This document shows positions 11,020 through 53,481 of a stretch of DNA of 64,000 nucleotides, one piece after another. The notes under the pieces are model-generated. The model was not told the origin of the DNA and did not search any database. It saw nothing but the letters and a program-made list of their open reading frames with translations. Within the stretch, counting starts at the first letter, position 1; every line of letters starts with the position of its first letter. Origin of the DNA: Haplodiscus bocki (Eukaryota); contig OZ296650.1 in NCBI GenBank assembly GCA_965655095.1, forward strand, positions 68,758,001 through 68,822,000, given 5' to 3'. Both the position numbers and the translations under genes were made by a program.

Positions 11020-11960
11020 TTAAACTAAATCGAATAGACATTGTCGATCACTATTAATTGATATTACGTTATTAGTCAGTAGAAGAGCATATCTACTACG
11101 TTAATTGTACTGCAGCCACAACAAGTGGTAGGAAATGTTTTCACTTTCTCAGGTTGAGGAGTTCTAAACTCTTCGTGATGTGGTATGTCAGAAACAAACA
11201 AGTTACACCCAAGTCTGTTTCTTGCTGTATAGGTCTTGGAAGTATTGAAACCTTCTGGTGTAATATATGGTCGAAGAGTATTGTTTTTAGACATATGTAT
11301 AAAATAACAGACCTTTTCATTACTTGTTTGAAAAAAATTGTGATGTTCATATACTCCCATTTCTGGATAATTTTCTGTAAGTAACATACATCGAACACTT
11401 GAGACACTTGATTAATAAAAAAAATCGTTGCTGTTTGTTTGCTTTCGAAATTGTTCTCATAGCATAAAACCTACTGAAACCTAGAATGAAACATCAAATC
11501 TCTTTCCCACTCCTAACTCCAAAACCCAGTTATTTTCAGTGGATACGTGTGTATTATGAACAAGTATTTTAGTATATACTAATTTTGTTGCTGATTTGGG
11601 CAAAAAATGCTCTAACATTACATTTTGCAGAGAAACAGTCTGTAGGTAAAGTTGCACAAAGCAACTAAAATCACCTAAAAAAATTCTTTCCTCTGTAGTT
11701 TCACTAGCACAGTTTGTACAGAAGCATCAGTAGCTTTAGCTCTAGGAGCATGACTGACATCATTTTTATGAATAAATCAAAGCGATGTTGATTTTTGTCC
11801 GATTAATTTTTCTAATCTTTTTCAGCGTTTTCTTGATGCTCATCAAAACAAAAAGCATCTTTCAAATAAACTCAAAGTTGATAAAAATTTCTTTTATTAT
11901 TTTTGAAATTAATTGAATGTTGTTGGCGAGTATCAATATTTCGAAGAAAATAGAAAAGTT
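11020..11960 (-). pseudogene. Second, N-terminally shorter major-capsid paralog
   Basis: VYLKDAFCFDEHQEN ... ENYPEMG ... NNTLRPYITPEGF ... GCNLFVSDI ... ISINSDRQCLFDLV*, collinear with the C-terminal part of the adjacent major capsid gene. Confidence 0.7.
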
Positions 11961-11975
11961 ATGAGAAATTTAAAA

Positions 11976-13297
11976 TTACAGTAGGTCAAATTGCCTCTCT
12001 CCATCACTACCAATTGACATGTTTTTTTGGTCAGTAAAATATCATATCCAGTTTATTGTACGGCAACCGCAACAGGTGGTGAAAATTCAAAAGTAAATTT
12101 TACTGAACGAATAGTTGCAAAAACCGCATTATATCGTATGTCAAAAACGTACAAGTTGTATCCAGGTCTAGCGTACTCTGGAAACCCACTGAAAGTGGCA
12201 AATTGTTTTCGTGTAATAAATGATTCAAGAGTTTTGTCTCTAGCTAAATGTCCAAAACAAGATTCAATCTCACCATAAGCTTGAGAAAAACTTCCATGTT
12301 CATAATCACACTACATTCCAACGTCTGGACAGTTTTCAGTACTTATGAAACATTGAGCATTTTTGACAACTGGTTGATGGAATGTATTTTTTTGTGTATG
12401 TTGATAAAATTGGTTTCATTGCATATATCCTATAACAACAAAAAATGGAGCATCATTTCCTTTTTTAACTGCTAAATCAAAAGTCCAATTTTTTTCAGTT
12501 GATACTTTTTTTATGAACAGATCATTTAACATATGTCATATCTTTTGCTGTTCTGGATACCGTTTTGTTCCTACCATAAACTTTGTTGAGAAATGTTTGG
12601 AGTGAAAAGTGGAACAAACCAAGTATTTTCACTAATATGATTTATTCCTCCTTTGGCCTAATATCAGTCACTCTATCAACATCAGTAGCTGCAATTGTAG
12701 GCTTATCGCTAAAATAAATACTATCAATTTTTTTTGGAAAGGGAATTTGCCTTTTAAACCCATTTGACATTTTCTTGATGCTCAACAAAACCAAAAAACG
12801 TGTTTCTTATAAGTTCTAACATGATGAATTCCTTTAGTTGTTGTTTCATCAGTTAATTCTCGTTCGCCGTTTGAACATCTCGATGAAAATCAATTGATTA
12901 ATCATCACTGTTTTCATTATTTTTTATTAGTTTGGACATTAAGCAAGCAATATGAGCATTTTTACAGGTTTTCTGTTTTTTTTTCACTACTATTTATGAA
13001 ATTGTATTCACTAAACGAAGGAATAGGTTCTATATTTAGTGATTTTATATGATCTATATTGACATTATATATCTATAAATGGAATATTAAGATATAAATC
13101 ACCTTATTATCTACTTCGAGATATCTATCCTTCAGAAATAGCAGTAGCTTCTATTGGTAAATCAATAAAAAATATAAAATTCATAATTTACAATGTTTAA
13201 TGGTTATGGAGTAAAACAAAAAAAAACACTTTTAGGGAGAGCTCTTTCTACAAAGTAATCAGTTGCTGATTTAAACCTTTTTAAGAGAAAAAACTCA
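11976..13297 (-). pseudogene. Polinton major capsid protein (copy 1)
   Basis: NAHIACLM...SDD.SIDFHRD...RELTD...GIHHVR...FGFVEHQEN...WFVP...WTFDL...FSQAYGEI...GYNLYVFDIRY...SIGSDGERQFDLL*. Assigned from remembered Polinton capsid motifs and position in the element. Confidence 0.75.
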
Positions 13298-26286: not shown

Positions 26287-27823
26287 TGTCACGACAATCT
26301 TTTGGGCCTAAGTTTTGTGTAGTCTGGCCGCGGAAGATGCCTGCTTCAGGATGAGGATCACTCTGGGAGTCGTCCTCATTCGTTCCCTGGTTTTCCACGT
26401 TTGTGTTCCGGAATGTTCCCGGAACGGTTTCGAAATGCGTATGTATTTGTTGGTTCGAGAGAAATTCGTCTAATTTAGACAGAGCACCCAAAATGCGGGA
26501 CTCTGTCCTGCTGAACTCCTGGGACAGTTTTTTACTGACTCTGCCTTCAATCTCCTCAGAAACTTGTGTAATATATTCCTCGTTAATTCTAGGAACGGAC
26601 GTGTTTCGTGACTGGCCGTTCCTAGGATTTTCCTCTTGTGTTTCTCTTGTAACGGCTGCCAACTTTCGTTTGTTTCTCAACGTTGCCATCTTCTTGAAGG
26701 GAAAATGCTACGCAGTTATGAAGACCGAATTATTTTGTATTTGTTAATAAAGTTGAGATTGTAACAAAAATGTTATTCCCTAAAATAAACAAATAGTCGC
26801 AATCCGTACAGTCAACCGATAATCAAAATGATATTAAGGATTTCTCTTTAGTACTTTCGTTTCTCCTATTTATACCTTTTCCTTGGCGGGAAACATAATT
26901 GTTTACACACCAAGTAAAGGTACAAAGTAGGGAAAAGTACTTTGATCACAATAATTACAAAGGAAAAATGCCGACTCTGGCGGGAAAAAAACAGCTTTAC
27001 CTCTATTTCTTCCTTTACAGACCGCGTCTTTTCCATCTTTCGACGGAAAATATACGGGTCTGATCAGTCAGAAGTGGATATCAAAGTGTTTTTTCCCGCG
27101 CCGACACAATGAATAAACAAATGATCAAAAAGATTTTCCATAAGAGGAAAGTATTATAAAATGCAACAAAATTAGGTAAAATACACTAAAATAATCATAT
27201 AAAATCATAATTACATGCTTGGTAATACTATTGCATCAATTTAATCCACTTTTGGAACGAAACTAGGCTTTTTCTTAACCCGTTCCACGTTTTTACTAGC
27301 TCACGCCTCAATTTGGCTGGAGCGTTCCGTGGCGACTACGTAGCCGCCTGTAGCACTGCCTTCCGCAGTACTACTGAGGAGAATGATTCTGGTGGCTACG
27401 TAGACGTCCCGTGTCCGTCCAAAGTGAAACAGCGCAAAAGCACAGCGGATTGGCTGAAGGTTTTGTGACGTCACCAGATCGGTAGCCACGTAACGCGTAC
27501 GTAACAAAATATTCATTCCTAGCTTAGAGTGGCTGCTAGGTAAGTACGTGTTCGTTACGTAAAAGTTGCTTCTCAATCTGGTTCAGTACACGGGAGTGCT
27601 ACGTATAAAATACGTAGAATTTGTATGAAAATATACTGGGGAGTGATACGTATTTGATACGTATCAACTACATGTAAAAGGAATGAAATAATACTGCAAT
27701 ATTATTATATGAATGGAAATGGAAAAGTCTAAAGTATTGATACAGTTTCTTGTAATTTTCAGGCACTTTGAGGATGTCCTTTCCTTTCTTTATGCTCGTA
27801 GGCTTCGCGGATATACTGCGACA
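26287..27823 (-). repeat. 3' LTR (1537 bp) carrying a duplicate gag N-terminal ORF (26273..26689)
   Basis: Preceded by the PPT; ends TGTCGTGACA. The ORF MATLRNKRK... runs into the flank and stops at 26273. Confidence 0.95.
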
Positions 27824-27835
27824 CTCCCCCTCTTT
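27824..27835 (-). promoter_or_regulatory. Polypurine tract
   Basis: AAAGAGGGGGAG immediately before the TG of the 3' LTR. Equivalent AAAGGAGGAG at 39022-39031. Confidence 0.9.
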
Positions 27836-30745
27836 GTGAAAGGACATTCCCATGGTCAACCTTCTTTTCTGTTTTCGATGCACTCTGCTCATCGATGATT
27901 GTTGCAGATAGAAATCACAATTGTCAGAGTTCACAAGATAACCAATCGCCGGTACCAATTTGAATCATAAATGAAGAACTATTCTCGCCGATCAGAGTTG
28001 ACGAATTCACCAAGAGTACTTTGTCAAGTGACGGAGTACATACGTAGATTCTCCGTAGTTTTCTTTTCGGCTGGGAAATTCTTTGCAGTTTCTGTATTGA
28101 AAGGTAAAATTGATGAAGTTAAGTAATAGTGAGTAGAATTTGATGGCGTTAGTGTTTAATTAAGTCAAGGAAAGCAAAATTTTGAAATGAGGAATCTTTT
28201 AGTTTCGTTCCTCAACGGTTCCTTGAAATATCATGCTGATGTCATTGCTGGCAGACAATTTCATCAAATTTATAATGAGTAAATGTTTAATGACTTAGGC
28301 TTGTAAATCCATCACTTGATAGTCAAGTGTTGCTGTTCCATGTAATGTCTGAGAAAAATGTGATCCTGCATGAGGAGATCACTTCATCCAAGAAGATACT
28401 GTGTCAGCTGTAGGTTCTGCCAGAACTCGTTTTGCCATTTCTATCAAACTCCATGTGCCCCCAAAGAGTATTTTCTTGTGGAGATGGGCGAGGAGAGTCC
28501 GGGAATCTGGTTGGATTTCTGGAATAGCTTGTTGTTGGAGATCATGGCGAAACTGATGAAGATGCGGGGAAGGAGACACACATCGAGGGTTAGGATGTCG
28601 ATGTTGTATGTGGTGCTCCCGCGTTGGCGATCTCCGGGTTTGAGTTGCAGTGTTTCATTTTCTCAGAAATTTTCCGGGAAAAGGACTGGAGGGACAGATT
28701 TTGTCTGAGTGTGTTTTTGGCACCGCTCGACCTCCGCAATGTGAATTTTCAAATCTTCATACCTCATTAGCTTTTGGTTTGCTGGAATAATATGGTGGCC
28801 ATCCATACTTTCCATAAGCTAGTAAACAGTGCGCACCTCTTCATGAAGATGACTTCGTGAGGCTTTTATGTTTTAGCTTAAAATTGTTCTGGGGAACCAT
28901 TTATTCGTCCGGATATCTCCGGGACCCTTCGGATTGACTCGGTTGTGATCCGAGTTTGAAGTTGTTGCTCCCACTTCGGAGGAGGATGTCCGGAAAGGGG
29001 TATTCTAGAAAAATATCTCTCACGGCTACTCTTGAGAATTAGATTCTCTCTAATCTACATTGTGGATTTGTTTTTGGGGCAGTGGTTTGTTATCATCGTT
29101 TTTGCAGGTGATGCCGAATTTGCTCCTAGAGTCCGGAAGAGATGACGTACCGACTGGAGTGGAGACTGATGGTCAGACGCCTAGTATCGCTAGTTGCGGG
29201 CTTCAGTCTGACGTCTCTGAAGTTGTTCACAGTCGTAGTCGAAGTTGGGAGCTAATGGAGCAGGCTTTTGATGATGGTAATATTCATGTTCAAAAGAGGA
29301 GTTTACCGGTATTGTTCCTCATTGGTTCCAGATATCACCTCATTTTTGCCTTTTAGATTAATTCGTCACCGAAACCTGCTGCCACTGTTGTGCATGCCAT
29401 TGGGCATTAGATTATTTGTTTTTGTCGCTCCGTCAGTGTGGTAGAAAAAGCTCAGTTGCCGAATCTTCTAATGAATAGTGGGCATTCCCGTCGGATTTGT
29501 GTTTGGGCAATCAGTTGTGTGTGTGTGAAGTATATTTTATGTTGACAGAATTGAATGAAGTACAGGATCAGCTGCGACAATTTTGTGGTACGTTCTGTAG
29601 AATTTCCGGAATTCTTCCGTATCACTCCGTGTTTTTTCCTGGGTGGAAGCAGTAATGTCGTTGATGTCACTCATACTGGGGTTATCTGGGGCTGTTCCTG
29701 GTTTTTTCTCATTCAGTCTCTTCATTGCCTGTATTGTTTTAGTTGCACACAATATCGTCGAATTGCAGTCTGATAGAGAATGAGTGGAAAATGAGTCTGT
29801 CGACAAGGATTATCCTCAGAAAGTGACATTAGAAATTCACTATTGCAATCACCAATATCCATTGAGAACTAGTAGTCAGAACATCGTTTTTGTTCCAAGA
29901 AAACTGTGAATAGCTTCCAGGAATAGGTACGTGTTTGCTCCATGTCAGTTCCATAACACGTTCCTAGGAATTCCGGAAAGTGTACGTGGGCGTTACGTGG
30001 AACATACTAGGACAGATTGAAAAATTCAATGTCTGTGATTTTCGTTGCAATTCGGCTTCAGGTGATGACGTAGATCATATTTTGTGCTGCGGGGCTTGGT
30101 AGAATTATGGTTTTGGTGCTTCCAATTCGTGTCCCGTTTATAGTTGAAAACATGGTCCGTATCCATTCCGTCATATGTCCCTTCTTTTTTGGAAACTTTG
30201 TGGGCAAACTTCTCGTATGGTGCATAGTATACTCCTAGTCAAATATGTGTGTAATTAGATAGTTTACGAAATCCAGAGGCAGATACACTTTTCAGGAACT
30301 ATGATCGAGGACACTGACATATACAGCTTGTCCATGTCTCATCTCTCACAAGCGTTTCCCAAACAGCGGTGAAGTTGTTTTGTGAGAAGGGAAATATTGT
30401 TATCTCCATTAAATTTCAGCTGTGATGCCGTTAGTCGTTTCTTGGATTTCGTTTTGACATTTCTGGGAGTTTTTGAGGCACAGAACTTGTTTGCTCCTAG
30501 TTTCATTTTCTCGGAACTGTTCCGTAGAGGTTCCGGATTTTGAAGTGAGGTTTCCTTTAATGACGTTGTTCGTCAATCTACATCATTTTTCTATTTTAGT
30601 TGGGGCGTATGCGTGCTTTCATTAGTTTCAGCAGTAGAGTCGTTTTGAATATTAGGTAACTTGAACTATCCACAAATATCTCCAGAGGTTGCTGCCAGAC
30701 AACACATGGGATTGGTGGAATATTCTTCTGTTGGTCTCCGGTCTG

Positions 30746-32337
30746 TCAGTCACTGTTCCGGAGTGAAAATGTGACATTTATAGTTAAGATGTTGGGCTGT
30801 AGCATGGACAGAACCAGATATACTGTCGTGTGCGTCCTGTTCTTGAGGTTTGTTCTTCCAGGGAAGTGGCCTGTTTGCTGCATTGGCTCCAACGTAACAT
30901 CTCTCTGTGGAGTGGTTGGTTTTGCCACATGTCGCACAGGGAGGGTAGAGAGTTCTAGATTTTCTGTCAATTTTGTGGTTGTTGATTTAGAGTCGTTTGT
31001 GTCACTGTTGATATTTCCAGCGTTATCTGGGTTGCCTTCAATTTGTTTTTTGTCCATCACAGTGTTCATCTGAGTCTCATCAGGATATTCCAAACTGTTT
31101 AGCTCCAATTCCCTTTTCAGGTGTGTCACAATCTGTTCATACGTGCCATTCTCCAAGTGGGCGTGGTTTATTGATTTCTTCAGGTGTGGAGGCATTTTGG
31201 CATATATGAATTGGTCAACGATTGCTTGGGCAGCAACTCCGAACGCATCTTTTGCCAATTTCTGGAGTTCGTCCAAAAAATCAATTAACTTCTGGTTCGT
31301 TGGATTGAAAATTAATTGTTGAAATTTTCGTTTTGCCGTAGCCATTGACTGGGGTTTCACGTATTTTCTACGGAACACAGTCGGAATTTCTGCTAGATTC
31401 TCTCGGTTCCGACTGCTGATGTTTCTGAACGTCTGCAGCGCATCACCACGCATGAGAGAAGGGAAGTAGTTCACTTTGTCTTCTTCTGTGAGCTGATTGT
31501 GGATTTTTAAACTCGTTTGGAATAGATCTTCAAACAGTTCAAATTTCTCTGATTTCCCGTCGAATGTTGGCATTGCTGTCGTGGGGGATTTAGGCAGTTT
31601 CGAGATTCTGTTACTGTTGTTATCGATATTGGCAGAATTACTGCTCGTCGCCAATTGCTGAAGGGCCAACAAAATCTGGTCTGCTTCAATTGTCGCAGGG
31701 ATGTTCTCACAGCGAAATTGTGGCTGACTTGTGGGCGCGCCTCCTTTTGTTTTCCTGAGGAAATTCCCGAGGATCAGTAGGGGATCTCTTCTTGAACTGC
31801 TGTCACCATGTCATGGCCATTGCGATTTTCTTCTGTAGCTGCTGTCACCATGTCGGGGCGATAGCGAATCTCTCTTTGAACTCCTATCACAATGTCACGA
31901 CAGTGACGAATTTCTCCTGTAGCTCCTGTCACCATGTCATGACAATCTTTTGGGCCTAAGTTTTGTGTAGTCTGGCCGCGGAAGATGCCTGCTTCAGGAT
32001 GAGGATCACTCTGGGAGTCGTCCTCATTCGTTCCCTGGTTTTCCACGTTTGTGTTCCGGAATGTTCCCGGAACGGTTTCGAAATGCGTATGTATTTGTTG
32101 GTTCGAGAGAAATTCGTCTAATTTAGACAGAGCACCCAAAATGCGGGACTCTGTCCTGCTGAACTCCTGGGACAGTTTTTTACTGACTCTGCCTTCAATC
32201 TCCTCAGAAACTTGTGTAATATATTCCTCGTTAATTCTAGGAACGGACGTGTTTCGTGACTGGCCGTTCCTAGGATTTTCCTCTTGTGTTTCTCTTGTAA
32301 CGGCTGCCAACTTTCGTTTGTTTCTCAACGTTGCCAT
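30746..32337 (-). pseudogene. gag: gag of subfamily A (stop at 31774, continues as ORF 30746..31672)
   Basis: MPTFDGKSEKFELFEDLF...LMRGDALQTF...FRRKY...KLIDFLDELQKLAKDAF capsid-like domain; frameshifted CCHC knuckle near 30900-30935. Confidence 0.88.
31777..31944 (-). repeat. Four in-frame 42-bp repeats, each an LTR-end motif plus a PBS
   Basis: tgtcaccatgtc-type cores at 31801, 31843, 31885 and 31927. Peptide CHDMVTGATGEIRH/CRDIVIGVQREIRY/RPDMVTAATEENRN/GHDMVTAVQEEIPY. Confidence 0.95.
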
Positions 32338-33479
32338 CTTCTTGAAGGGAAAATGCTACGCAGTTATGAAGACCGAATTATTTTGTATTTGTTAATAAAG
32401 TTGAGATTGTAACAAAAATGTTATTCCCTAAAATAAACAAATAGTCGCAATCCGTACAGTCAACCGATAATCAAAATGATATTAAGGATCTCTCTTTAGT
32501 ACTTTCGTTTCTCCTATTTATACCTTTTCCTTGGCGGGAAACATAATTGTTTACACACCAAGTAAAGGTACAAAGTAGGGAAAAGTACTTTGATCACAAT
32601 AATTACAAAGGAAAAATGCCGACTCTGGCGGGAAAAAAACAGCTTTACCTCTATTTCTTCCTTTACAGACCGCGTCTTTTCCATCTTTCGACGGAAAATA
32701 TACGGGTCTGATCAGTCAGAAGTGGATATCAAAGTGTTTTTTCCCGCGCCGACACAATGAATAATAACATAAACAAATGATCAAAAAGATTTTCCATAAG
32801 AGGAAAGTATTATAAAATGCACCAACACTAGGTAAAATACACTAAAATAATCATATAAAATCATAATTACACGCTTGGTAATACTATTGCATCAATTTAA
32901 TCCACTTTGGGAACGAAACTAGGCTTTTTCCTAACCCGTTCCACGTTTTTACTAGCTCACGCCTCAATTTGGCCGGAGCGTTCCGTGGCGACTACGTAGC
33001 CGCCTGTAGCACTGCCTTCCGCAGTACTACTGAGGAGAATGATTCTGTTGGCTACGTAGACGTCCCGTGTCCGTCCAAAGTGAAACAGCGCAAAAGCACA
33101 GCGAATTGGTTGAAAGTTTTGTGACGTCACCTGATCGGTAGCCACGTAACGCGTACGTAACAAAATATTCATTCCTAGCTTAGAGTAGCTGCTAGGTAGG
33201 TACGTGTTCGTTACGTAAAAGTTGCGTCCCAATCTGGTTCAGTACACGGGAGTGCTACGTATAAAATACGCAGACTTTGTATGAAAATATAGTGGGGAGT
33301 GATACGTATTTGATAGGTATCAACTACATGTAGAAGCAATGAAATATTACTGCAAAATTATTATATGAATGGAAATGGAAAAGTCTAAAGTATTGATACA
33401 GTTTCTTGTAATTTTCAGGCAATTTGGGGATGTCCTTTCCTTTCTTTATGCTCGTAGGCTTCGCGGATATACTGCGACA
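31935..33479 (-). repeat. 5' LTR (1545 bp) containing the first 403 nt of gag
   Basis: Direct repeat of 26287-27823. Starts TGTCGCAG and ends TGTCATGACA; gag ATG at 32337. Confidence 0.95.
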
Positions 33480-33891
33480 GTTGGGTTGAACACACTAGTG
33501 ACATGCTGACTGCACTCATGGAAGTTTTCGCGATTTCAGTTACTGTATCATCAAGTTCCAGGGGAATTTTAAGGAACACGGTTTGTTGCCGTCAATAGAA
33601 ATGTTATTCAAATACCTACTGCACATGAGATTCAGCTCTTGTACTTTTCGAGATCCCTTTGAAAGGCAATGTTCGGACAATTGTCGGATTTGCTTGCTGT
33701 TGTGCAATCAGAGAACGGTCGAAAACACTATCAACTTTAAAACTAGTTCAAGTGTAACTTCTGCCGAAATTTTTCGCAAAAACGCTTCATTACAGAACAT
33801 TGAACATGAAGACTACGCAGCCCCTTTTCACGGCCTAGCAACAAGGAAAAAGATGGGTGTGAACAAAAAGCGAAAGCACCGGAGTTCATTA

Positions 33892-34425
33892 CCCGGGTCG
33901 AACTTTTTTGGGAAAACGCCGCTATTTTTCAGGTATAATGGCGTAACGCCGCTAACGCCGTTAACTTACTAGCAAAACGCCGTTAACGCCTTTATACCGA
34001 CAAGGAACGCCGTTAACGCCGTTAACATTCATGTTCAACGCCGTTAACACCGCTATTTTTCCGGTTAAACGCTTTTAACGCCGCTATTTGTCCGGTTCAA
34101 CGCCGTTAACGCCGCTATTTTTCTCGTTAAACGCCGTTAACGCCGCTATTTTTCTGGTTAAACGCCGTTAACGCCGCTACTTTTCCGGTTCAACGCCATT
34201 AACGCCGCTATTTTTCCGGTTCGACGCCGTTAACGCCGCTGTTTTCCCGGTTCAACGCCCTTAACGCCGCTATTCTTTCGGTTAAACGTCGTTAAAGCCG
34301 CTCTTTTTCCGGTTCAACGCCGTTAACGCCGCTACTTTTCCGGTTAATAACGGCTTTTGTGACTAATTTTGACCACCGTTAACGCCCTTATACCTGAAAA
34401 ATGTCGGCCATTATTTCGACCCTGG
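33892..34425. mobile_element. Non-autonomous DNA transposon (MITE-like), TA-flanked, with internal minisatellite
   Basis: TA|CCCGGGTCGAA ... TTCGACCCTGG|TA (11-bp TIR, one mismatch). A related left end, also after TA, occurs at 56206 and in each array unit. Confidence 0.8.
34037..34346. repeat. 31-bp minisatellite, about 10 copies (AACGCCGTTAACGCCGCTATTTTTCCGGTTC/A)
   Basis: Unit starts at 34037, 34068, 34099, 34130 and onward. Confidence 0.95.
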
Positions 34426-34586: not shown

Positions 34587-37005
34587 TGTCGCAGCACAAC
34601 TGCGAGGCATGCGGCCAGCCCCTACCAGCCTAAAAGACACCCTAACGCTCAGGAAAAACTCAAACATTACACACTTTTAATCAAACTCTAACTATCATTC
34701 TCGTATGTACTTTTAACTGTTGTGCATATATACGGATACGTATTTATTACGTATCCTTAACAATGCACATATATATGGGTACGTATTTATACGGAACCAA
34801 ACTGATCCGGACTAGGGCGGAACCGTTACGGAACAAACAAATGTTCACAGAGTATTATTGACTTGAGAGGTGCTATTTTTATATTAATATAATTATACAA
34901 ATATTAAATATAAATCCACCTTTCTCTATGAATCCGACGGTTTGATTGATTGCAACGAGTGCAGTTTAATTAGAAATTACGACTAAACTGATGCTACAAG
35001 CCAAACAACTGATTTCAAGTGTATTGACTCTCGGAGTGAATATTTGTTCCGTAAGTGTTCCGTAGCTACTAGTCTGGTGATGTCACAAATACTACTTTTA
35101 CTATGCCGTGCTGTGGTGATTACGGATTGATTCCGGAATGACTCCTCATTTGAGCACAAACTACTACCACTGCTATTGAATAAGGAATTATCCGGAAACG
35201 ACTAGGTGCTACTCGTACAAATGAGGAGTAAACTAGTAGTGCTACTAGTTTATCCTCATTTCCAAAGAGTAAAGACTAATGAACTCTTATTAATAATGAT
35301 GAAGTGAACACGAAATTGGTGAGCATTTATGTTTTTCATGTTGTTCTGCTATTTAAAATCATGCATTTTGTATTTTTTATTTCACTTTTCCTAGCTTAGG
35401 GAATACTTTTCCTTTTTCCATTTCTGGAATATACATTTATAAACAATACGTTAAAAAAAACGTTGTAAACAATACGTCGGCGCAAGAATAGACACTTTGA
35501 TGTCCATCTCTGATGGATTAGGACCGTCCATTTTTCTGTCGAAATAAGAAAAAGGCGCGTCATATGAGGCAAGAGATGGATGGAAAAGTTGTGATTTTAA
35601 ACTTTGATGTTATGATTTATAAAGTACCTCTCCCCATTTGCATTTTGACTTGGCGTGTAAACAATTATGTTTCCCGCCAAGAAAAGGTATAAATAGGAGA
35701 GAAGAGAGTACAAATTTAGAACTTTTCAAAACATTGTAATCTTGACTAGCACTTTGTGGTACTGACGTTACTAACCAGTATCAATATCAGTATTTTTGTT
35801 TCGTTATGGAAAACTGTAAACAGCAATTTGACTTTCCTTTAAGAAGAGGGAATCAAATAATTATCACCGAAAAATACTTTTCTTGTAGAAATGGAAACTC
35901 TTGGAAACAAGAGCGAATTGGCATTAATAAACAAAGAAAATTGTGAGGAACATCATTGCAGCATTTTGGCACAAAACTCGAAAGTTACCAGACCAAAAGA
36001 AGACTACATAACTCAAGTTTCTGAGGAAATTAAGAGAGGAGTGACTAAAAAGTTGTCGCAAGAGTTTAGCAGAATAGAAAACCGCATACTAGGCGCATTA
36101 GCACGTCTTGATGAATTTTTCATGAACCCGTTAATTAAGGGCCATTACGGAATCGCTTCAGAGACGTCCCAGAACGCATATGGCAAAAACCAGATAACTA
36201 ATCGGGACGACTCCCAGATTGATCCTCATCCTGAAGCTGGCATCTTCCACAAACAGACGACGCCAAACTTTGGCCCAAAAGATGGCCATGACATGGTGAC
36301 AGGAAGTCACGAAGAAGTCACTTACTGCTCTCCTAGTACATCTTCAGTCAAGCAGAAAAAGAACCGCTCTACCAGTCAACCGCAATTCCGCAGTGAGAAT
36401 GCCCGTGCGACGATTGAAGCAGACCAAATCCTGTTGGCGCTTCAGCAGTTGGCAAACAACAACAATTCTGCAGTTTTCCATAACAATATTAACAGAATTT
36501 CAAAATTGCCAAGGTCGCTCACAACAACGATGCCCACGTTCGACGGGAAATCTGAAAAGTTCCAGCCGTTTGAAGATCGTTTCCAAACGAGCCTCAAAAT
36601 CCATAATGAGCTGACTGAAGAGGACAAAATCACTAAATTCCAATCTCTCATGAGGGGAGATGCATTACAAACGTTTAAAAACAATATTGGTTCAACCTCA
36701 TAAAATCTGGGAGAAATCCTGGCAGTTTTCCGAAACAAATATGTAGAAGCGCAATCGATGACGACAACAAAGCATATTTTCCAGAAACTTGTCTTCAATC
36801 CAGCAAATCAGTAGTTAGTATTTTTTTTGTTGAACTTCAAAAACTAGGCAAAGACGCATTCGGAAAAGCTGCGCACGCCATCATCGAACAATTCATATAC
36901 GCTAAAATGCCACCACACCTGACGAAATCAATAAATCAGGCTCAGTTGGAAAAAGATAAATTTGAACAGATTGCCACACACCTAGAAAGGGAAATAGAGT
37001 TTTTT
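34587..37005 (+). mobile_element. Diverged subfamily-A element: 5' LTR (34587-36293), PBS and truncated gag
   Basis: Starts TGTCGCAG; ends ATGGCCATGACA|TGGTGACAGGA. ATG at 35891 is again 403 nt inside the LTR end. Gag is homologous to 30746-32337. Confidence 0.88.
35891..37002 (+). pseudogene. gag: gag (ORF 35891..36703 plus disrupted continuation)
   Basis: DYITQVSEEI...KKLSQEFSR.ENRILGAL...GHDMVTG...MPTFDGKSEKF...LMRGDALQTF. Confidence 0.88.
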
Positions 37006-37371
37006 TGTGACACGGTTGGGGCAGCATGATAAATTTAGACAATGTGTCGGAGAAATATCGTCGATGTTTCTTTTTTACCTTTGGTGATCCGCTGTTGAAG
37101 TATCCGAATTAGGATGTTTCACGCTTCTTTTCGGGCCCACGAGCAGCGTTAGTTGTAAATATCCAACCATTCGTCTGTTTTGAGTGTTTTAAGGCCAGGA
37201 ACTTCGGCATTTGTTACTGTTGTATGATTGTCTTCAACTTGGATAACGTAAGAAACGGAACCTCAAACCTTTGATTGTGTGGAGGTGGTTCAAGGGGGTC
37301 GAATTGTTGGAGTCTAGTGAGCTGATACGTTTCCGCCGAAACTCCGGCGGCTACAAAATAACATTAGAAGA

Positions 37372-39900
37372 TGTCGTTGCAGTCTTCTGAGCCAGAGTTT
37401 TGTGTAGTCTGACTCTGAGAGATGCTTGCTTCAGGATGAGGATCACTCTGGGAGTCGTCCTCATTCGCTCCCTGAATTAGGCATTTAAGCCAAGTGTGTT
37501 CCGCGACGTCGCCAGAGTGGATCCGGAGTGGCGCTGAATTAGCGGGTTCAGAAAGACCTCGACAAGTTGGAAAAGAGCATCTCAAACGCAGCTTCCCGTC
37601 CCACTGAACTCCTTGGAAAACTTTCGTGTTACTCTACCATCAAATTTTTCAAAAACTCGAGTAATACAATCTCTTGTGACCTGGGAACATTTGCTTCGTG
37701 CCAAGTTGCAGCTAGTAAGTACTTCACAATTCCCCTTTTCAGGGCTGCAAGTTGTCGCGCAATTCTCAGAGTTACCATTTTCTACGGAAAAGTGATGAAC
37801 AGCGATTAACAATGAATTATCTCAGTTTAATAAGGAAATCAACTCGGTAACAGTTATAATGAATGTCGCATGAAAAAACGAAAATCGACTGGTTTTTATC
37901 GTTAGCATTATTAACTACAACTGCGTCTCGTTCTTTAATTTCCCCTGTTTTTTTACATAGCGGGAAACACAATTGTTTGCACACCAAGTCAACGTAAAAA
38001 CAGAAACAGGGAAAAATATTCCTACAGAATACAAGATCAAAAGCTGAAACTCTGGCGGGAGATGAACACTTTCCCATCCATTTTTTCCCTCGTAGAACTC
38101 GTCTTTTCTATCTTTCGCCGGCAAATTGACGGACCGAGTCCGTCAGAAATGGACATCAAAGTGCTTCATCCCACGCCGACATCTCAGTTTATAAAAACAG
38201 CTTCTTTCCTCAGAGGGAAAACAGAGAAAACAAAAGCTGGAAAAATTGAGGAGACTCAGGGAGCATATTTTTTTTATAAAAAGTGAGGAAAAAAATTAAA
38301 AGTAATTCTATTCTTTTCGTTCATGTACATTTCATCACCAGATATTTCGTTAGTCTCTGCTCTTTAGGAATGAGGAGAAACTAGTAGCGCTACTAGTTTA
38401 CCCCTCGTTCAAACAAGTAGCGACTAGTTGTTTCTGGACAAATCTGAGGCCATCTATGTAGCAGTTGAATGAAACAGGCTGTGTTCAAATGATGAATGAA
38501 TACGGAGTCACTCCGTAATCACCACAGCACTGCAGCAAGGGATAGTTAAAAGAGTGGAAGTGACGTTGCCAGGCCAGTAGCGACGGAACACGTATGGAAC
38601 AAATATTCAACCCGAGAGTCAAAACACTCTATTTCAGTCAACATACTTATAGCACCAAATTAGTTGAAAGCTCTGTTTTGAACGGCAGTCATTGCAATCA
38701 ATCAAATTAAGTACACTGAAAAGGTGAATTATTATTTAGTATTCAAATAAAAATAATATTATAGAAATAGCACCCTTCAGGTAAAAGTTTTTTTATGAAT
38801 ACTCGTTTGTTCCGTAACCGTTCCTTCCTCGTCTGGATCAGTTTAGTAAAGTCTTCCGTATAAGATACGTTTTAGTATGTATGTACAATAGTTACAAGTA
38901 TGTATGAACACTTTGATTTGATGTTTGATTGAAAGTAAGAAAATTTGAAAATACTTTGAGCATTGGGGTATGTTTCTTGCCGATAGAGGTTAACAACAGG
39001 CTTTGCAGATGTGCTTCGACACTCCTCCTTTGTGGAAAAGACATTCCCATGTTCAAGTTTTTGCTTTTGCCTGCTTGGGGGCGGCGGCGTGGAGGATGGG
39101 CTCGAAGCAGAAGCGATTCGCCGCGGTTCATCAAGGTACAATGTCTTGACATCCGAAGATGTCTCCCATTCATTTACTAAGCTAACCAGCATTGATGGTG
39201 TCGATATATCAGAAAAGTCAAGCACTTCCCGTGGTGTCGGGATGTCATCAATTTTGGGAGGGTCTGTTTGTTCCTCTGTGATGGATGCCGGAGGTTTTGG
39301 ATTGAAGGGTTCATAGGCGGATATAAATCGTTGAGGCTTGGAAGTATCAAGGGTTGCTGCCTGCCATAGCCGTAATGCATTGTCGGTTCATTGGAATTTT
39401 ATTCAATGGTCAAACTCTGTGGCTCCGGAGAAGTTACGGATGATATTGTGCTCACTTTTCTAGCTGAGGCATGGGGTTCCGTCGAGTTGAGGATGTCTGG
39501 TGTTATTTCTGGGTGGGCTGTTTTTTCACAACTGCTCTATATAGACGACAATTGAGTCTGTGGAAAGGGAATCTAAATAATTGACTCGAATCATTGCGCT
39601 GAAAATCAAAGTTTGATTCAAGCTACTGAAATTGATGGAGTGATTTTGAAAAGTGATGAACTAAACAAAATGCAGTTGGTACGGTTCATCAGGTGGGAAT
39701 AGCTTTGAAGTTCCTGTGGTAGCATTAGAAATGATGAAGTGGAGTAACTGACGGTATAAACGAAGTTGATGAGTTGTCTACAAATCACCGAACAGAAAAT
39801 GAGAATGAGGAAGTTTTGCATTACGTTCCTTGATGTTCGATGCTTTGCAGGTGTGCTGCGACAGAAGGCTGTAAAACAACTCATTCGTAGTGTTTTGTGA
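37372..39900 (-). mobile_element. Subfamily-A-related 3' LTR (37372-39021) with PPT and upstream 3' internal region
   Basis: PPT then TGTCGAAG at 39021; ends GCAACGACA at 37372. Decayed ORF from ATG 37778 (...EDDSQSDPHPEA). The pre-PPT sequence matches 27836-27860. Confidence 0.85.
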
Positions 39901-40935: not shown

Positions 40936-42851
40936 TGTGACGGCATGATCTACTCCGTCAATTACAACGGGTAGAACTCAGTCACACAGGGCTATGCTCT
41001 GCCCTTATTTGAAGACTAATATAATAGAACTATCCTTAATAAACCGCTGGATGAAAACCCCCACCATTTTGAAGTTATGTTCTTATATATACTTATATAC
41101 TAATATATAAATATATATATATATAATCTTACAAATATTTACGTACTCATGTGCAAAATCCATACAAATATCGAAGAAGCTTGTATCATGAAGGAAAGGT
41201 CATAGAAAAATGTTTAAAACACGCAACTTATCTGCAGTCTTATACTCAAATTTGATTGGTCAAAGACAAGCAAGCGTATCAACTGCTGACCAACCAAAAG
41301 CGCTGCTGGAACATGGTCAAAATTGGTCACTGGGACCTAATTTTGACCACTTTGCTCAAAGCGAGTGGTCGTTTTCAAACAAAAGGCGAAATACGGCCAA
41401 ATGAAATCAGAAAGCCATTGTATAAACAGACATAATTAAAAAATGTTGCTATGTACTTATATAAACATATAATTATGTGATTATGAGATATAAAATTATT
41501 TAGTGCTAATAATTATTAAATCCTGAGTGAGAAAAATCATCTGGTCAAAAGACGGTCATAGTGCCCACTTTTGACCACTACATATTAACCTACAGTTAAA
41601 ACCTGTGCATGAAGCTTAATACTAATATTCTTGCCATATTTATTACATTATAACTATATTTAACCATCCATTATATGAGATACGCATGTAAACATGATTT
41701 TATTATCCCTGAACATTTATCCAGTTCCCATGACCATATTTTTGGTGGTCATGGTTTTGCGGCATATATTCTTTGATGTTATTTATATTACTATTTTTAA
41801 AACTGACGTCATGATGATGAAATACATACTTCGGGTTGAACCCTCTTTGATGTTTAATATAAATAGAACCCGAGGACATGACGTCAAAGAAGTGATCCTC
41901 CCAATTGGCCGGCGAAGATGAAGGAAAAGAGACGAACCTAAAGGAAGAATCACCGCCAGAAGAGTTTTTGACTATCCTGAAAACAGTTCACTATAACAAT
42001 CATTTAAGCTGATACAATTTATTTGTGGGTTATCTGTACTGTAGGAGAGAAACTGTCCTCCTAAAAACAGTTGATATTATTAATTTTCGGAACCAACATT
42101 ATCCTTTGTGTCAGTTAAAATCCCTTACAAACTTTGTAGTTTGAAGTATTGATTCACTTTTGTGCTACTGTTAATTTTCACCGTTATTACAATTCAGTTA
42201 TTAAAACAAACATGGTTTCTACTCGTAAGAAGAGACAGTCAAACAAAAGGCTCCTCAGCCAATTAGATGACTTCGATCAAGATATGATTATCGGCAGCAC
42301 TGCAAGCGAGAGGCAAGAAAACGTTGTGGTCGATGAGGGTACTAATGTCCAGGATTTTACCGTTGGTACTTCTAACGTTAGTCCGGTTATCAATAAAAAT
42401 GCAATGAATGTGAAAACATTAGAAAGGTGTTTTAATGAGAGGATTGATAGAGAAATGAACAATATTGTTGATACGGTTGAAGATAGGATACAGAGTGCAA
42501 TTTTGGCCGCCATTGATAACATCGTTGCTCCAAAAATCGAATTAGCAATTAGGTCATTAAATGCATTTTCTGGACGGGACGTGACTAGCGTATCTGCAAA
42601 TTCAGAATGTAGGGAGCATGCGGGAATTGGTGCCTCTTTTGAAAACGCATCTGAAAACAACATCACAATAGGTGTAACAAGTATAAATGATGAGGCTCGA
42701 CGCAACTCCCAAGACGGGGTAAGTGAATTGTCGGTCCCGGGAACACAGTTTGACCGACAATCACACATTCATCACGTGATGACAGGAGGTTCAGAACAGA
42801 TTCACAACCCTCATCACAAGATGAAAGAACCTAGTAATGAGACTCATCACA
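40936..42851 (+). mobile_element. Subfamily-B long LTR (1916 bp) containing ORF MVSTRKKRQSNKRLLSQLDDFDQD (ATG 42212)
   Basis: TGTGA...TCACA termini. The ORF is open for 640 nt to the LTR end, with three CATCAC-ended units near the end. No matching TSD (ccgcc vs attgc). Confidence 0.8.
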
Positions 42852-44200
42852 ATTGCGAAGACTTTCTTGCAAGCGTGCTGATATCATCACCGTCTTCGAT
42901 GGCGTTTTTTCAAAAAGGTTGTAGCTGAGTTTAAGCTGGGAGCATCTTTTTTGGACGTACACTCAAACAGTCTAGGAAATTGATTGACACAATTCAGCAT
43001 TCGGTCGGTCTTTCAGGTGCTGAAAATCCAAATGCGATTGCACTTGACTGCCTTTTTCTCAATCATGACAATGCCACAGTGAGAAAAAAAGTTCCATCAA
43101 TGCTAATTCGATTACAGTTTGAATGTCTTTGTAAGTTTTCTCAATTTTAAGAGGAGTCTTTGCACGACGTCCTCCTTTCCAATGAATTGCTCCATGATGT
43201 AAATCTATTTCAAGTTTTGTTACCCTACACTTTCCCAAGTCAGTTTTTCCATTATAGAAAAGAGAAATTGGCTGAAGCTCTTTAAGTAATCTTTCAATAT
43301 CATCAAACAATTGGGGACTTAGTTCTGTATTTTAGTTCTCATTATGTTGTACGGTACGTTTCGCTTCTTTTCTCAAACGATCTGCTGGAAACTCAGACGC
43401 ATCAATTGGAACGTCGCCTGGAGAAAGTGTTAATCAGACAAAAAAATTCGTCATTGTTTCCAACTTTAAATTTTGCAAACTAAACTTTATGGTAGCTAAC
43501 ACAAAAGAATCATGAATGAGGTTGAAATTGATAGCTCAACAACAGGCCAGACTCTGTCCACTTTGAACCTGTAGTGTGCGCCTCTGGACATTTGAAGTCA
43601 GTTGCGCACTTTTAAATATCATTTCCAATGGTTGCTAGAGTCTTTACATTACAATGTTTTAACTCTATCAGACCAAGTCCTTAGGTCCACTTAACGTTTA
43701 ACAACAACTTTTGGGTTTCTGGACTTTGTTATACATGGAACAATCTGCGCTTATTGGATGGAAATTCTATAGGCCAGTGAAGTTCCAGCGAGCTCAAAGT
43801 CTTTCGGCAAAGTTGCCAGTGGAAAAAATTGGTTTTGTGACTTTGTGAATGGCTTTTCGGTGTTGTTTTTTTGTCCAAGGAAACATTGTGCATGCAAATG
43901 AAGCTTCACCCTAGAGTGAAAAAGTCATGGTAAAGTCCATCAACCGAAACTAATGGCGTTCACAGACCACTCCCAGCAACCATAAACGTTCGAAACTTGC
44001 CAGTCTATACGTGACGGTTGGTATTTCATTTACTGCAAATAAGACGCAGTGTGGTTCTCTGGTTGCACGTCAGTCTATTCAGAACTGCTCGCAGCAGAGT
44101 AAGTTTTTTTCCCGGGGCCAACAGTTGTCTCAGTTAAGCATTTCAACATTCAAGAACTAGTTCAAGGTAAAGCAACTGTTTAGTCATCCGCTAACCCTAA
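42852..44200 (-). pseudogene. Decayed Gypsy pol fragment (protease to RT start)
   Basis: DLGKCRVTKLEIDL..GAI.WK.G.R..TPLKIEK...DIQT.IELALME, then CGIVMIEKK...DFQHL, matching a Gypsy RT N-terminus. Confidence 0.6.
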
Positions 44201-51633: not shown

Positions 51634-53481
51634 TGTCATGCCCGCATGAGGGAAGCATGAGATATCTACATATCCTTAAACTTACGGTATGTCATATATG
51701 TATGAAGCCATTATCATTTTTAAGAACTTAATGAAATTTCTGTAGCCAAAATCGCATAGAACTATAAATGCCATTGTGTTCTACTACCCCCCCCCCCCCG
51801 ACATAAACGTGAATTATGGAATTATGTACCATGTAAGCAACATTTGTATTATGTAGAAAAAATTGCTGAGCATATAAAAGCATCTTTTTCCCATCTAAAA
51901 CCAGTTTTCTAGAACTACGAGATGAAAATGACAGATTCCGATGGAGGCTCAAAGTAACCGGAACTGACGTAAAAGACCCCGGAATGCTCCAGCCGGAACA
52001 ACATAAGCCAGTACAAGTACCCTCTGTAGCGGCCGGACTAATGGGATAAATAGAGAGGCGGAATACATTTTCATTGGGAAACATCGGTCTGATGTTTCCC
52101 TGTACTATTTCATTCCGAACAGACGCACAGTATAAAATTGTTGAGCAGAGAGTTTTTACTGACATTTAAAAGCCTCTTAGTCATGACGGAATGGATTAAT
52201 TACGGAAACAAATTTCATTGTTTCACATCCAACTGGTGTAAACTTCCGACAATGCTTTTACCATAGTTCTAAAATTCCATCAGTTTTCTTCCAAACGATG
52301 AAAACCTCTTGTACAGACTGCCAGATAATTTAAAATACATTTCTTTTCATCGATAGGATAACAATTGGTCAGAAAAAAAGTGCTATTGTCAAATCTCATC
52401 AATTGGTTGATAACACTTTTCTTTGATAAGTGTTATTTATCATTTTTTATCCACACTAAGCAATAATAACTCAACCGTCCCACTCATAAACTACAGCGGA
52501 ACACTGATGGGTGCCATCAGTAAAGTACATCGGAATTCATCCAATTTAGGCATGAAAAGCTACTAGACAAGAGAAAATAGGATTACAAATAGACGAAATG
52601 ATGAATCCAGTGGAAGCTAAAATAGCCTGAAAATGACGTAAAACATATTGAGAAAATTCAGGGCACAGAAAAAAAGCCATCATTTCCCTAAATTTAACCC
52701 CGTACAATGACTTTACGTATAATATTGATGTATTTAGATATAATCCACGATTTTGAATTTATGCAAACTTATTGCATCAAATGTGCATAATTAGCATGTT
52801 GTACGAAGCGTAACCGCCATTTTTGCGGTGGATATGCGTTCACACTTTAATTAGTTAGTGAGTGATATAACTAACACGCCAATGAGAAATCTCTGATGGT
52901 AAGAATTGAGTCTTACCATCGGTCATGTTACCACGCAAATCCACCGAAAACCACCGCAGTTTTGGTGCAATTAGTAGGGAAAAAAATTTTCACCTTTGCA
53001 AGAACGTACACGTCTTACCAACACAGATTGATCCTAGTTGATTTAGCTTACATGGAACCGCAACTGAAAATTCATCATTTTCCATCGACTTTTGTAAACT
53101 CGCTCGCATTCAGACCAACGCTTTTTTCAAATTCCAAAATACATCTAATTTCATCGTAAATTCAAGTCTTGAAATTTGAATGCTTGATTCTGACTCCTAC
53201 CGAAAACTGAGAAGCGAAAAAGGTATAACACAGACTCAGGCTGCACAATGAGTAAAAATGGTAGTGTTGAATGCAACAGACCCGTTAATTCATCGGAAGA
53301 TATTGAGGGAGAAGGTCCTGAAAGTCGTACTTTGACCCAAGAATTGGACAGCGAACAAATCAAAGTGTTCATCGCCTCACTAAGACTACAGCTAGACGAA
53401 TTGACTCGACTGGTTTAGGGGGCCATTACCCCAAGACTGATGACTGTACCACTTTTTTTACAGCCGCACATCACCCCGACA
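51634..53481 (+). mobile_element. Solo LTR (subfamily C, 1848 bp) with 5-bp TSD ACATG and a decayed internal ORF (53180-53481)
   Basis: TGTC...GACA termini; ACATG at 51629-51633 and 53482-53486. ORF MLDSDSYRKLRSEK...TLTQE...EQIKVFIASLRLQLDELTRLV runs toward the LTR end. Confidence 0.85.

What the first reader, a model, noticed from the sequence alone, without database searches (positions are those of the whole stretch)
31777..31944. In-frame array of LTR-end+PBS junctions whose end motifs match the termini of different LTR elements
Seen: at and after the 5' LTR end of the complete element there are four 42-bp units, each ending ...GACA and followed by a TGGTGACAG-type PBS (unit 2 degenerate: TTGTGATAG), in an alternating 84-bp higher-order pattern. 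The bases before each PBS differ. TGTCATGACA is this element's 5' LTR end. TGTCGTGACA is identical to its 3' LTR end (26287-26296). ATCGCCCCGACA matches 11/12 with the end of the subfamily-C solo LTR (53470-53481). ATGGCCATGACA matches 12/12 with the end of the LTR at 36282-36293. Established: the PBS position defines the cDNA U5 end, and integrase recognises the terminal ~10-15 bp. Inference: an element with no visible pol carries several alternative priming sites, each producing a different att end, which could let it borrow integrases from several helper families. Alternatively the array is a record of past junction captures. The 42-bp period keeps gag in frame.
Basis: partly seen in the sequence, partly recalled or inferred. 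Interest (0 to 1): 0.9.

Follow-up and report, generated by a model that had tools for sequence, protein, structure and literature searches.

The report
Repeated primer-site junction inside retrotransposon gag
A 42-base piece spanning the LTR end and the tRNA-Leu primer site of a gag-only BEL/Pao retrotransposon has been tandemly duplicated in frame inside Gag; almost always only the first copy primes, so this is an unstable coding repeat and not a device for borrowing several integrases.

Summary
On the minus strand the 5' LTR end (31944-31935) is followed by 42-nt units, each starting TGGTGACAG and ending ..GACA.

The element is a gag-only BEL/Pao retrotransposon with 1.54-kb LTRs, TSD CCAAC and a PPT. 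Gag starts 134 codons inside the LTR and reads through the array. The PBS pairs 12-13 nt with tRNA-Leu.

The units are copies of one ancestral junction. A relative at 36293 has a single junction that lines up with the last one here.

About 936 LTR ends in three subfamilies stop at the first junction. Three TSD-flanked solo LTRs run exactly one unit further. None was found ending at junction 3 or 4 of this family. A sister subfamily has absorbed one unit whose PBS is dead.

Unit number ranges from 3 to 10, in steps of 14 codons, and often differs between closest relatives.

So alternative priming exists but is rare (about 0.3%). The idea of several att ends for several integrases is not supported.

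This is a new variant of a known kind, of moderate interest. First-stage notes record the same array on other pieces of this genome.

The parts
31935..33479 (-). 5' LTR (1545 bp, TGT...ACA). Its last 10 nt, TGTCATGACA (31944-31935), are junction tail T0.
   Evidence: Direct repeat with 26287-27823, 97.7% identical. LTR start is TGTCGCAG, preceded by CCAAC.
26287..27823 (-). 3' LTR (1537 bp), ending TGTCGTGACA and followed by the TSD copy CCAAC (26286-26282).
33480..33484 (-). Upstream copy of the 5-bp target-site duplication CCAAC.
27824..27835 (-). Polypurine tract AAAGAGGGGGAG, directly upstream of the 3' LTR.
   Evidence: The same tract precedes 3' LTRs in L041, L053 and L070.
31893..31934 (-). 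Unit U1: working PBS TGGTGACAGGAG (12 nt complementary to tRNA-Leu plus CCA), a body, and tail T1 TGTCGTGACA.
31851..31892 (-). Unit U2. Its PBS copy is degenerate in this copy (TTGTGATAG) but intact in most copies. Tail T2 is CGCCCCGACA.
31809..31850 (-). Unit U3: PBS copy TGGTGACAGCAG and tail T3 GGCCATGACA, the ancestral LTR-end motif.
31767..31808 (-). U4: the ancestral PBS and the sequence after it, colinear with the single junction of the relative at 36294 onward. The private stop TGA lies at 31776-31774.
31774..32337 (-). N-terminal Gag ORF. It starts at ATG 32337, 403 nt inside the LTR, and reads through the LTR end and the array. It is cut short here by a private stop and a later frameshift.
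   Evidence: Intact 519-aa versions exist in L004, L006, L018, L019 and L027.
30746..31672 (-). Rest of gag, with the DUF1759 / Retrotrans_gag domain of BEL/Pao Gag.
27836..30745 (-). Non-coding remainder of the internal region. No pol is present.
   Evidence: No minus-strand ORF of 90 aa or more between 27959 and 30745, and no pol Pfam family in ten ORF pieces.
35891..36703 (+). Related element with a single junction, GATGGCCATGACA|TGGTGACAGGAAG at 36293/36294, and an open Gag N-terminus.

Best explanation
What it is. The stretch is a coding minisatellite that straddles the U5/PBS boundary of a gag-only, non-autonomous BEL/Pao LTR retrotransposon. One 42-nt segment (14 codons) has been tandemly duplicated. 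It consists of the last ~10 nt of the LTR (..GACA), the tRNA-Leu primer-binding site (TGGTGACAGGAG) and about 20 nt after it. The LTR therefore ends on the first repeat. The later repeats are paralogous junction copies translated as ..D-MVTG.. units of Gag.

How priming behaves. Minus-strand synthesis is primed almost always at the first PBS. Each reverse-transcription cycle redefines the LTR end according to which PBS was used, so an occasional start at the second PBS gives LTRs exactly one unit longer. This outcome is not inherited, because the RNA is the same either way (inference). If the first PBS is lost by mutation, the next copy takes over and the old unit becomes part of the LTR, as in subfamily B (inference from the anatomy).

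How it changes. The identical block of LTR tail plus PBS (about 22 nt) lets units misalign, so the first-type unit is gained and lost often, always in whole units.

Open point. I could not separate misaligned strand transfer or template switching during reverse transcription from DNA-level slippage or unequal exchange as the source of these changes.
For: Element anatomy: LTRs, TSD CCAAC, PPT, DUF1759 gag, no pol. Gag is 519 aa and open in several copies, with 134 aa encoded in the LTR.

Primer: tRNA-Leu(CAG), confirmed by ARAGORN, and tRNA-Leu(CAA) both end ..CTCCTGTCA. In the intact copy L004 complementarity is 13, 11, 9 and 9 nt for PBS 1 to 4.

Duplication origin: the relative has one junction. 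Both T0 (through its left flank GGCCCAAAAGAT) and T3+U4 (through its right flank) align to that junction.

LTR-end census, counting an LTR tail followed by non-PBS flank: 501, 53 and 382 ends at the first junction in subfamilies A, A2 and D. Two real ends lie at T1 and one at a T2-like tail; none lies at T3.

TSD proof of the extended LTRs: L066 AACAC/AACAC, L067+L073 GGTCC/GGTCC, L068 GATGC/GATAC.

Subfamily B: the LTR carries ..CATGACA CGATGACAGGAG..CCTCACA, and solo LTRs have TSDs CCTAT, ACGCT and AAATC.

Instability: arrays of 3 and 5 units occur in genomic copies. Gag lengths are 519, 533, 547 and 561 aa; among 105 parsable proteins, arrays of 4 to 10 units number 45, 30, 20, 5, 3, 1 and 1, and growth is by the U1-type unit. 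One full element with TSD CTTGT has 10 units and both LTRs ending at T0. Unit number needs at least 27 changes on a 63-protein tree, against about 32 for shuffled labels, and 5 of 7 strongly supported sister pairs differ. 'Goes back 42' joints appear in four read sets. Spacing between junction cores is 42 nt in 87 of 90 cases.

Downstream PBS copies are dispensable: variants that break the PBS and recur in many copies (MLT 22, MVR 12, IVT 17) occur only at downstream positions, while the first unit shows only scattered changes.
Against: The junction core GACA+TGGTGACAG differs between paralogous units at 0.045 per site-pair, against 0.31 for the next 19 nt. This calls for selection or homogenisation on the downstream copies, which a purely passive repeat does not predict.

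The census uses strict patterns (22-29 nt, 1-2 mismatches, flank not resembling TGG). It covers three subfamilies only, so rarer or more diverged extended LTRs are missed.

Nothing was found that explains why the first of up to eight near-identical PBS copies is preferred. In L070 the copies are identical, yet the LTR ends at the first. Only a 7-nt complementarity to the tRNA, no better than chance, lies in U5.

No RNA or cDNA data were available, so priming is inferred from integrated copies only.
Confidence: 0.72

Rival explanations
1. The four junctions are alternative priming sites in regular use. Each gives cDNA with a different att end, so the pol-less element can be integrated by integrases of several helper families.
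For: Tails T0 to T3 differ. T3 equals the LTR end of a related element. One family-D LTR (L068) ends at a T2-like tail, CGTCCCGACA, that differs from its family's usual ..CATCACA and has a 4/5 TSD. So an end with another sequence was integrated at least once.
Against: About 936 LTR ends lie at the first junction and 3 at the second; none ends at T3 and none at T2 within this family. T0 and T1 share the same last 10 nt in most copies, so the only alternative seen in this family gives the same end. Subfamilies amplified with broken downstream PBS copies. The motif matches are explained by tandem duplication of one junction. No helper element or integrase was identified.
Confidence: 0.04
2. Adaptive back-up model. 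The extra junctions are kept by selection as spare PBS/att cassettes. When the working PBS mutates, the next copy rescues the lineage and the LTR grows by one unit.
For: The junction core is about 7 times better conserved between units than the unit body. Subfamily B primes one unit downstream of a dead PBS and went on to amplify. An LTR at 42765-42851 in the window also holds decayed junction-like units. The second PBS can prime.
Against: PBS-breaking changes in downstream units recur in many copies. Core conservation can also arise from homology-driven exchange centred on that block, or from the DMVT peptide. Lineage-level selection for redundancy is weak in principle. Only one or two take-overs are documented.
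Confidence: 0.14
3. Protein-function model. The 14-residue repeat is kept for what it does in Gag, for example as a spacer or an interaction motif, and its overlap with the PBS and LTR end is incidental.
For: The array is in frame and translated in intact 519- to 561-aa Gags. Changes come in whole 14-codon units, and the frame is kept in 28 of 32 genomic arrays.
Against: No Pfam family covers the N-terminal part. Unit number varies from 3 to 10 between close relatives, which argues against a tuned length. Unit bodies diverge freely, including by non-synonymous changes. In-frame change is expected anyway for any repeat tolerated inside an ORF.
Confidence: 0.1

Closest known systems
Engineered retroviral vectors with two primer-binding sites (Voronin & Pathak, J Virol 2004;78:5402, cited as ref. 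57 in PMC4227088 and ref. 39 in PMC3902901). The paper itself was not available to read.
   Same: There is more than one PBS on one genomic RNA. A start at the downstream PBS is possible and puts the intervening sequence into the LTRs. This is what the three extended solo LTRs show.
   Different: Here the arrangement is natural, with 3 to 10 copies 42 nt apart. It lies in frame inside gag, includes the LTR terminus in the repeat unit, and belongs to a BEL/Pao element. The downstream site is used in only about 0.3% of fixed LTR ends.
Ty1 of yeast (Pseudoviridae), from my own knowledge: the Gag ORF starts inside the 5' LTR and the PBS lies within the ORF.
   Same: Gag starts in the LTR, so the LTR end and the PBS are translated.
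   Different: Ty1 has one PBS, uses initiator tRNA-Met and is autonomous. No junction repeat is known to me.
BEL/Pao (Belpaoviridae) LTR retrotransposons
   Same: TGT..ACA LTR termini, 5-bp TSD, tRNA-complementary PBS, PPT, and Gag with DUF1759.
   Different: There is no protease, reverse transcriptase or integrase, so the element must be mobilised in trans. The LTRs are long (1.54 kb) and encode 134 codons of Gag. The junction is a minisatellite.
Non-autonomous LTR elements mobilised in trans (LARD, TRIM and BARE2-type elements; own knowledge; see also the abstract of PMC13570524)
   Same: The element lacks pol yet has hundreds to thousands of copies with TSDs.
   Different: It keeps a full, often intact Gag ORF.
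Coding minisatellites (VNTRs)
   Same: A short unit, gain and loss in whole units, reading frame kept, and closest relatives that differ in unit number.
   Different: The unit contains two cis-acting replication signals, the U5 end and the PBS. The repeat's first copy therefore sets the LTR boundary.

Membership tests
BEL/Pao LTR retrotransposon | Two LTRs in direct orientation with TG..CA termini, flanked by a short target-site duplication | tested here: met
   LTRs 26287-27823 and 31935-33479 are 97.7% identical and run TGT..ACA. The TSD is CCAAC.
BEL/Pao LTR retrotransposon | PBS complementary to the 3' end of a host tRNA immediately after the 5' LTR, and a PPT before the 3' LTR | tested here: met
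   TGGTGACAGGAG(T) is complementary over 12-13 nt to tRNA-Leu ..CTCCTGTCA plus CCA. The PPT is AAAGAGGGGGAG.
BEL/Pao LTR retrotransposon | Gag of the BEL/Pao type (Pfam DUF1759) | tested here: met
   PF03564, E = 1.5e-07, 31.9 bits against a cut-off of 25.4. The relatives carry PF03564 as well.
BEL/Pao LTR retrotransposon | pol with A17 protease, reverse transcriptase/RNase H and integrase | tested here: not met
   No minus-strand ORF of 90 aa or more between 27959 and 30745, and no pol family in ten ORF pieces. No window ORF of 180 aa or more is pol-like. It is therefore a non-autonomous derivative, not a complete member.
Multi-PBS element with alternative initiation (as in two-PBS vectors) | More than one tRNA-complementary site on the RNA | tested here: met
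   Four copies here and 3 to 10 in other copies.
Multi-PBS element with alternative initiation (as in two-PBS vectors) | Integrated copies whose LTRs include the stretch between the PBS copies, with a TSD | tested here: met
   L066 (TSD AACAC), L067+L073 (TSD GGTCC) and L068 (4/5 TSD). These are 3 of about 939 ends.
Multi-PBS element with alternative initiation (as in two-PBS vectors) | Direct observation of initiation at each site (cDNA 5' ends) | not testable with these tools
   No RNA or cDNA runs were available, only genomic contigs.
   First-junction ends number 501, 53 and 382. Two ends lie at T1, which has the same last 10 nt as T0. One lies at a T2-like tail in another family. None lies at T3.

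The most novel reading that the evidence does not exclude
The junction array may be a self-renewing, sliding priming cassette. Misregistered priming and strand transfer during reverse transcription would keep the LTR-end/PBS core homogenised among units. That process would generate the rapid gain and loss of units. It would also let the LTR boundary step downstream when a PBS dies. If so, this is a general route by which LTRs grow and U5 ends evolve, observable in a natural multi-PBS retroelement.
Probability: 0.2. Interest if true: 0.7.

Novelty: new variant of a known kind. Interest (0 to 1): 0.5.

Why it matters
The position of an LTR's end is set anew in every replication cycle by where the tRNA primer sits. 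This family carries 3 to 10 copies of the primer site, one after another, inside its own Gag.

It therefore gives a natural record of how strictly the primer site is chosen: about 99.7% of ends lie at the first copy. It also shows what a rare start at the next copy produces, namely solo LTRs one unit longer with perfect target duplications. And it shows how an LTR can grow permanently when the first site decays, as in subfamily B.

This makes primer-site choice and LTR-boundary drift countable in a genome with hundreds of insertions. For annotation it is also a warning. LTR boundaries and Gag lengths in this family differ by multiples of 42 nt for biological reasons, not through assembly error.

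Tried and rejected
- A first tRNA pattern with wrong T-arm spacing found nothing. So did a strict GACAGGA 5' end. The tRNA starts GGCAGGA, with a G-U pair.
- I first took the query to cover the PPT and read LTR+array pairs as tandem elements. One search showed the LTR is 1.54 kb, so most such pairs are ordinary 5' and 3' LTRs. True tandems do exist (L052/L053, L016/L017).
- The expected 3' LTR of the 5-unit copy L059 was not at the predicted place. The 3' LTR of L039 is truncated (L040). L050 and L051 have no matching TSD. So no 3- or 5-unit genomic copy could be paired with a clean 3' LTR.
- The 53470-53481 match is present at 11/12, with about 0.05 such hits expected per window. There is no flank similarity and no proof that it is an LTR end, so it carries no weight.
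- L068's LTR is not the same family as the LTR at about 42.8 kb in the window, although both contain GAGACTCATCACA.
- Co-variation of the T0 triplet with unit tails across proteins was not significant in a permutation test: 63 observed against 61.9 expected. The matches in the CPD lineage and in subfamily B amount to only two or three events.
- A search for a second tRNA-complementary signal in U5 that might explain the preference for the first PBS gave only 7-mers at chance level.
- No RNA run holds the stretch. The laid runs are contigs, so no transcript or cDNA ends could be read.
- Literature searches for natural PBS arrays found nothing relevant.
The majority line printed by the aligner was not used.

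Full report
OBSERVATION. On the minus strand the 5' LTR ends ...GATTGTCATGACA at 31935. It is followed by four 42-nt blocks that each begin with a TGGTGACAG-type motif: U1 31934-31893, U2 31892-31851, U3 31850-31809 and U4 31808-31767. The first three end in ..GACA. Tandem Repeats Finder reports period 42 (3.4 copies, score 147) and period 84 (1.8 copies, 81% matches, score 217). The 13-mer GACATGGTGACAG occurs three times exactly and once with two mismatches in 168 bp. Fewer than one hit with up to two mismatches is expected in the whole window.

THE ELEMENT. The LTRs are 26287-27823 and 31935-33479. They are 97.7% identical, about 1.54 kb long, and run TGTCGCAG...GTGACA. The element lies on the minus strand. 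It is flanked by the 5-bp duplication CCAAC (33484-33480 and 26286-26282). The polypurine tract AAAGAGGGGGAG sits directly before the 3' LTR. The internal 4.1 kb holds a gag ORF with the BEL/Pao Gag domain DUF1759 (30746-31672). It holds no pol: downstream of gag there is no minus-strand ORF of 90 aa or more up to 27959, and ten ORF pieces gave no pol family. An ORF starts at ATG 32337, 403 nt inside the LTR, and reads through the LTR end and the array. In this copy it stops at a TGA (31776-31774) and gag continues in another frame. In L004, L006, L018, L019 and L027 the same ORF is open for 519 aa: 134 aa encoded in the LTR, 56 aa from the array, then the rest of Gag. The array is therefore part of Gag. 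The LTR's last base is the A of each unit's ATG (GAC A|TG GTG ACA G = D M V T).

THE PRIMER. The genome holds tRNA-Leu genes whose 3' end is ...GGTTCGAATCCCACTCCTGTCA. One is an 82-nt tRNA-Leu(CAG), confirmed by ARAGORN. The other is an intron-bearing tRNA-Leu(CAA), present in a tandem cluster of more than a thousand copies. With CCA added, this end is complementary to TGGTGACAGGAG(T). In the intact copy L004 the match is 13, 11, 9 and 9 nt for PBS copies 1 to 4.

THE ARRAY IS A FAMILY FEATURE. The first genome search listed 40 matches that span the LTR end and the array at 92-96% identity, out of more than 3,400 candidates. In the 26 copies examined the LTR end is nearly always TGTCGTGACA, the second PBS is TGGTGACAG, and the codon after the array is TGC. 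Read sets of the same organism agree: the majority letters at 31940, 31891, 31886 and 31774 are the family's, not the window's. The window copy is thus a slightly decayed member. Its degenerate unit 2, its A in the 5' LTR end and its stop codon are private.

ORIGIN OF THE UNITS. A related element on the plus strand has one junction...GGCCCAAAAGATGGCCATGACA|TGGTGACAGGAAG..., and an open reading frame across it. Our T0 shares that junction's left flank (GGCCCAAAAGAT). Our T3+U4 is colinear with its LTR end, its PBS and the 700 nt after them. This is the signature of a tandem duplication of a 42-nt segment that begins about 10-12 nt before the LTR end. The 11/12 match at 53470 has no supporting flank similarity and no evidence of being an LTR end.

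WHICH JUNCTION ENDS THE LTR. I counted LTR tails followed by sequence that is not a PBS. The results were:
- Subfamily A (this element's): 501 ends at T0.
- Close variant A2 (...CCTAGAAGAATGTYGTGACA): 53 ends at T0.
- More distant family D (...GAGACTCATCACA): 382 ends at T0.
- The same test at T1: three hits, one of which is only a mutated PBS.
- At T2: two hits, one again a mutated PBS.
- At T3: none.

Both real T1 cases are solo LTRs of A2 that contain T0, an intact PBS1 and the whole of U1. Both are flanked by perfect 5-bp duplications: L066 AACAC, and L067+L073 GGTCC. The T2-like case, L068, is a family-D solo LTR extended by one unit, with a 4/5 duplication. Priming at the second PBS therefore does happen and gives integrated copies, but in about 3 of 939 ends. 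In this family the end it produces has the same last 10 nt as the normal one.

A BOUNDARY THAT MOVED. LTRs of sister subfamily B are 96-97% identical to ours over the 231-nt query near the LTR start. Their ends read ...GGCTCATGACA CGATGACAGGAGTTATAGAACAGACTACCAAGGATCCTCACA|. This is a former LTR end, a PBS with two changes that break the pairing with CCA, and 42 nt later the present end. Solo B LTRs carry duplications CCTAT, ACGCT and AAATC. B 5' LTRs are followed by fresh TGGTGACAGGAG arrays. My reading, which is an inference, is that the first PBS died, the next copy took over, and the LTR grew by one unit. The window's LTR near 42.8 kb shows similar decayed units.

INSTABILITY.
- Genomic copies with 3 units (U1 lost) and 5 units (U1 doubled) exist.
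- A protein search returned 1,362 relatives, with length peaks at 519, 533, 547 and 561 aa in the 120 listed.
- In 105 parsable sequences the arrays have 4 to 10 units, numbering 45, 30, 20, 5, 3, 1 and 1. Growth is by the first-type unit MVTGATGEIRHCRD.
- The 10-unit case is a complete element with TSD CTTGT. Both its LTRs end at the first junction, and its unit tails repeat its own LTR tail, TGCCCTGACA.
- On a tree built from the non-array residues of 63 full-length Gags, unit number needs at least 27 changes, against about 32 for shuffled labels. Five of seven strongly supported sister pairs differ.
- Spacing between junction cores is 42 nt in 87 of 90 cases. The frame between outside anchors is the same in 28 of 32 genomic arrays.
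- 'Goes back 42' joints appear in all four read sets.

ARE THE DOWNSTREAM COPIES FUNCTIONAL? Against function, changes that break the PBS recur in many copies at downstream positions (MLT 22, MVR 12, IVT 17). The first unit shows only scattered changes. For some constraint, the core GACA+TGGTGACAG differs between paralogous units at 0.045 per site-pair, against 0.31 in the next 19 nt. Homology-driven exchange centred on this block would have the same effect, so this does not prove selection.

MECHANISM: SHOWN AND INFERRED.
- Shown: the anatomy, the tRNA match, the census, the TSD-flanked extended LTRs, the absorbed unit in B, and the unit-number polymorphism.
- Inferred: an extended LTR is a one-generation outcome, because the transcript is the same whichever PBS primed. 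B arose by PBS loss and take-over. The ~22-nt block of LTR tail plus PBS drives the misalignment.
- Not resolved: whether misalignment happens during reverse transcription or in chromosomal DNA, and why the first PBS is preferred even among identical copies.

COMPARISON AND NOVELTY. The element is a pol-less derivative of a BEL/Pao retrotransposon. Gag starting inside the LTR with the PBS in frame recalls Ty1 (own knowledge). Initiation from a second PBS is known from engineered two-PBS vectors (Voronin & Pathak 2004, known here only through citations in PMC4227088 and PMC3902901). Literature searches found no natural, in-frame junction minisatellite of this kind. That is not proof that none has been described. 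I rate it a new variant of a known kind.

LIMITS. The pattern counts are strict samples. No expression or cDNA data exist here. Other first-stage notes describe the same array on other pieces of this genome. They are not independent evidence.

Noticed in passing
G000:C1:161,072,000-161,240,000 (outside the window): A very large tandem cluster of intron-bearing tRNA-Leu(CAA) genes and gene-like copies. The period is about 424 bp, and more than 1,000 matches to the T-arm plus acceptor end lie on one strand.
   Followed up: partly
window 34006-34345, also 56261-63771: A 31-bp tandem repeat of 11 copies (AACGCCGTTAACGCCGCTATTTTTCCGGTTC). Related stretches recur inside a 2,578-bp unit that is repeated four times at 54155-63349 with near-100% identity.
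   Followed up: no
window 11754-15594: Two direct copies of a roughly 2.1-kb segment, 98-99% identical and 2,127-2,128 bp apart.
   Followed up: no
L052/L053 (C9:48.59 Mb) and L016/L017 (C4:63.39 Mb): Head-to-tail element tandems that share an LTR (LTR-internal-LTR-internal). In L053 the middle LTR is preceded by a PPT and followed by a junction array.
   Followed up: partly
window 42700-42860 (+): Another LTR-borne ORF (42149-42928) ends with junction-like units whose PBS copies have decayed: TGATGACAGG and AGATGAAAG, each closing in ..CATCACA. It belongs to a different family from L068.
   Followed up: partly
L031-L060: LTRs that are 96-97% identical over the 231-nt query near their start carry at least four different last 70-110 nt (types A, A2, A', B). 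The U5 end evolves, or recombines, much faster than the rest of the LTR.
   Followed up: partly
window 53249-53481 (+): A short ORF (MSKNGSVECNRP...) ends just before ...CATCACCCCGACA. It may be the Gag start of an unrelated LTR family that also begins inside its LTR.
   Followed up: no
window 37371-37474 and 37930-38181 (-): Fragments of a third, more diverged LTR of the family (73-86% identical). It ends ...CTGCAACGACA and no PBS follows.
   Followed up: no
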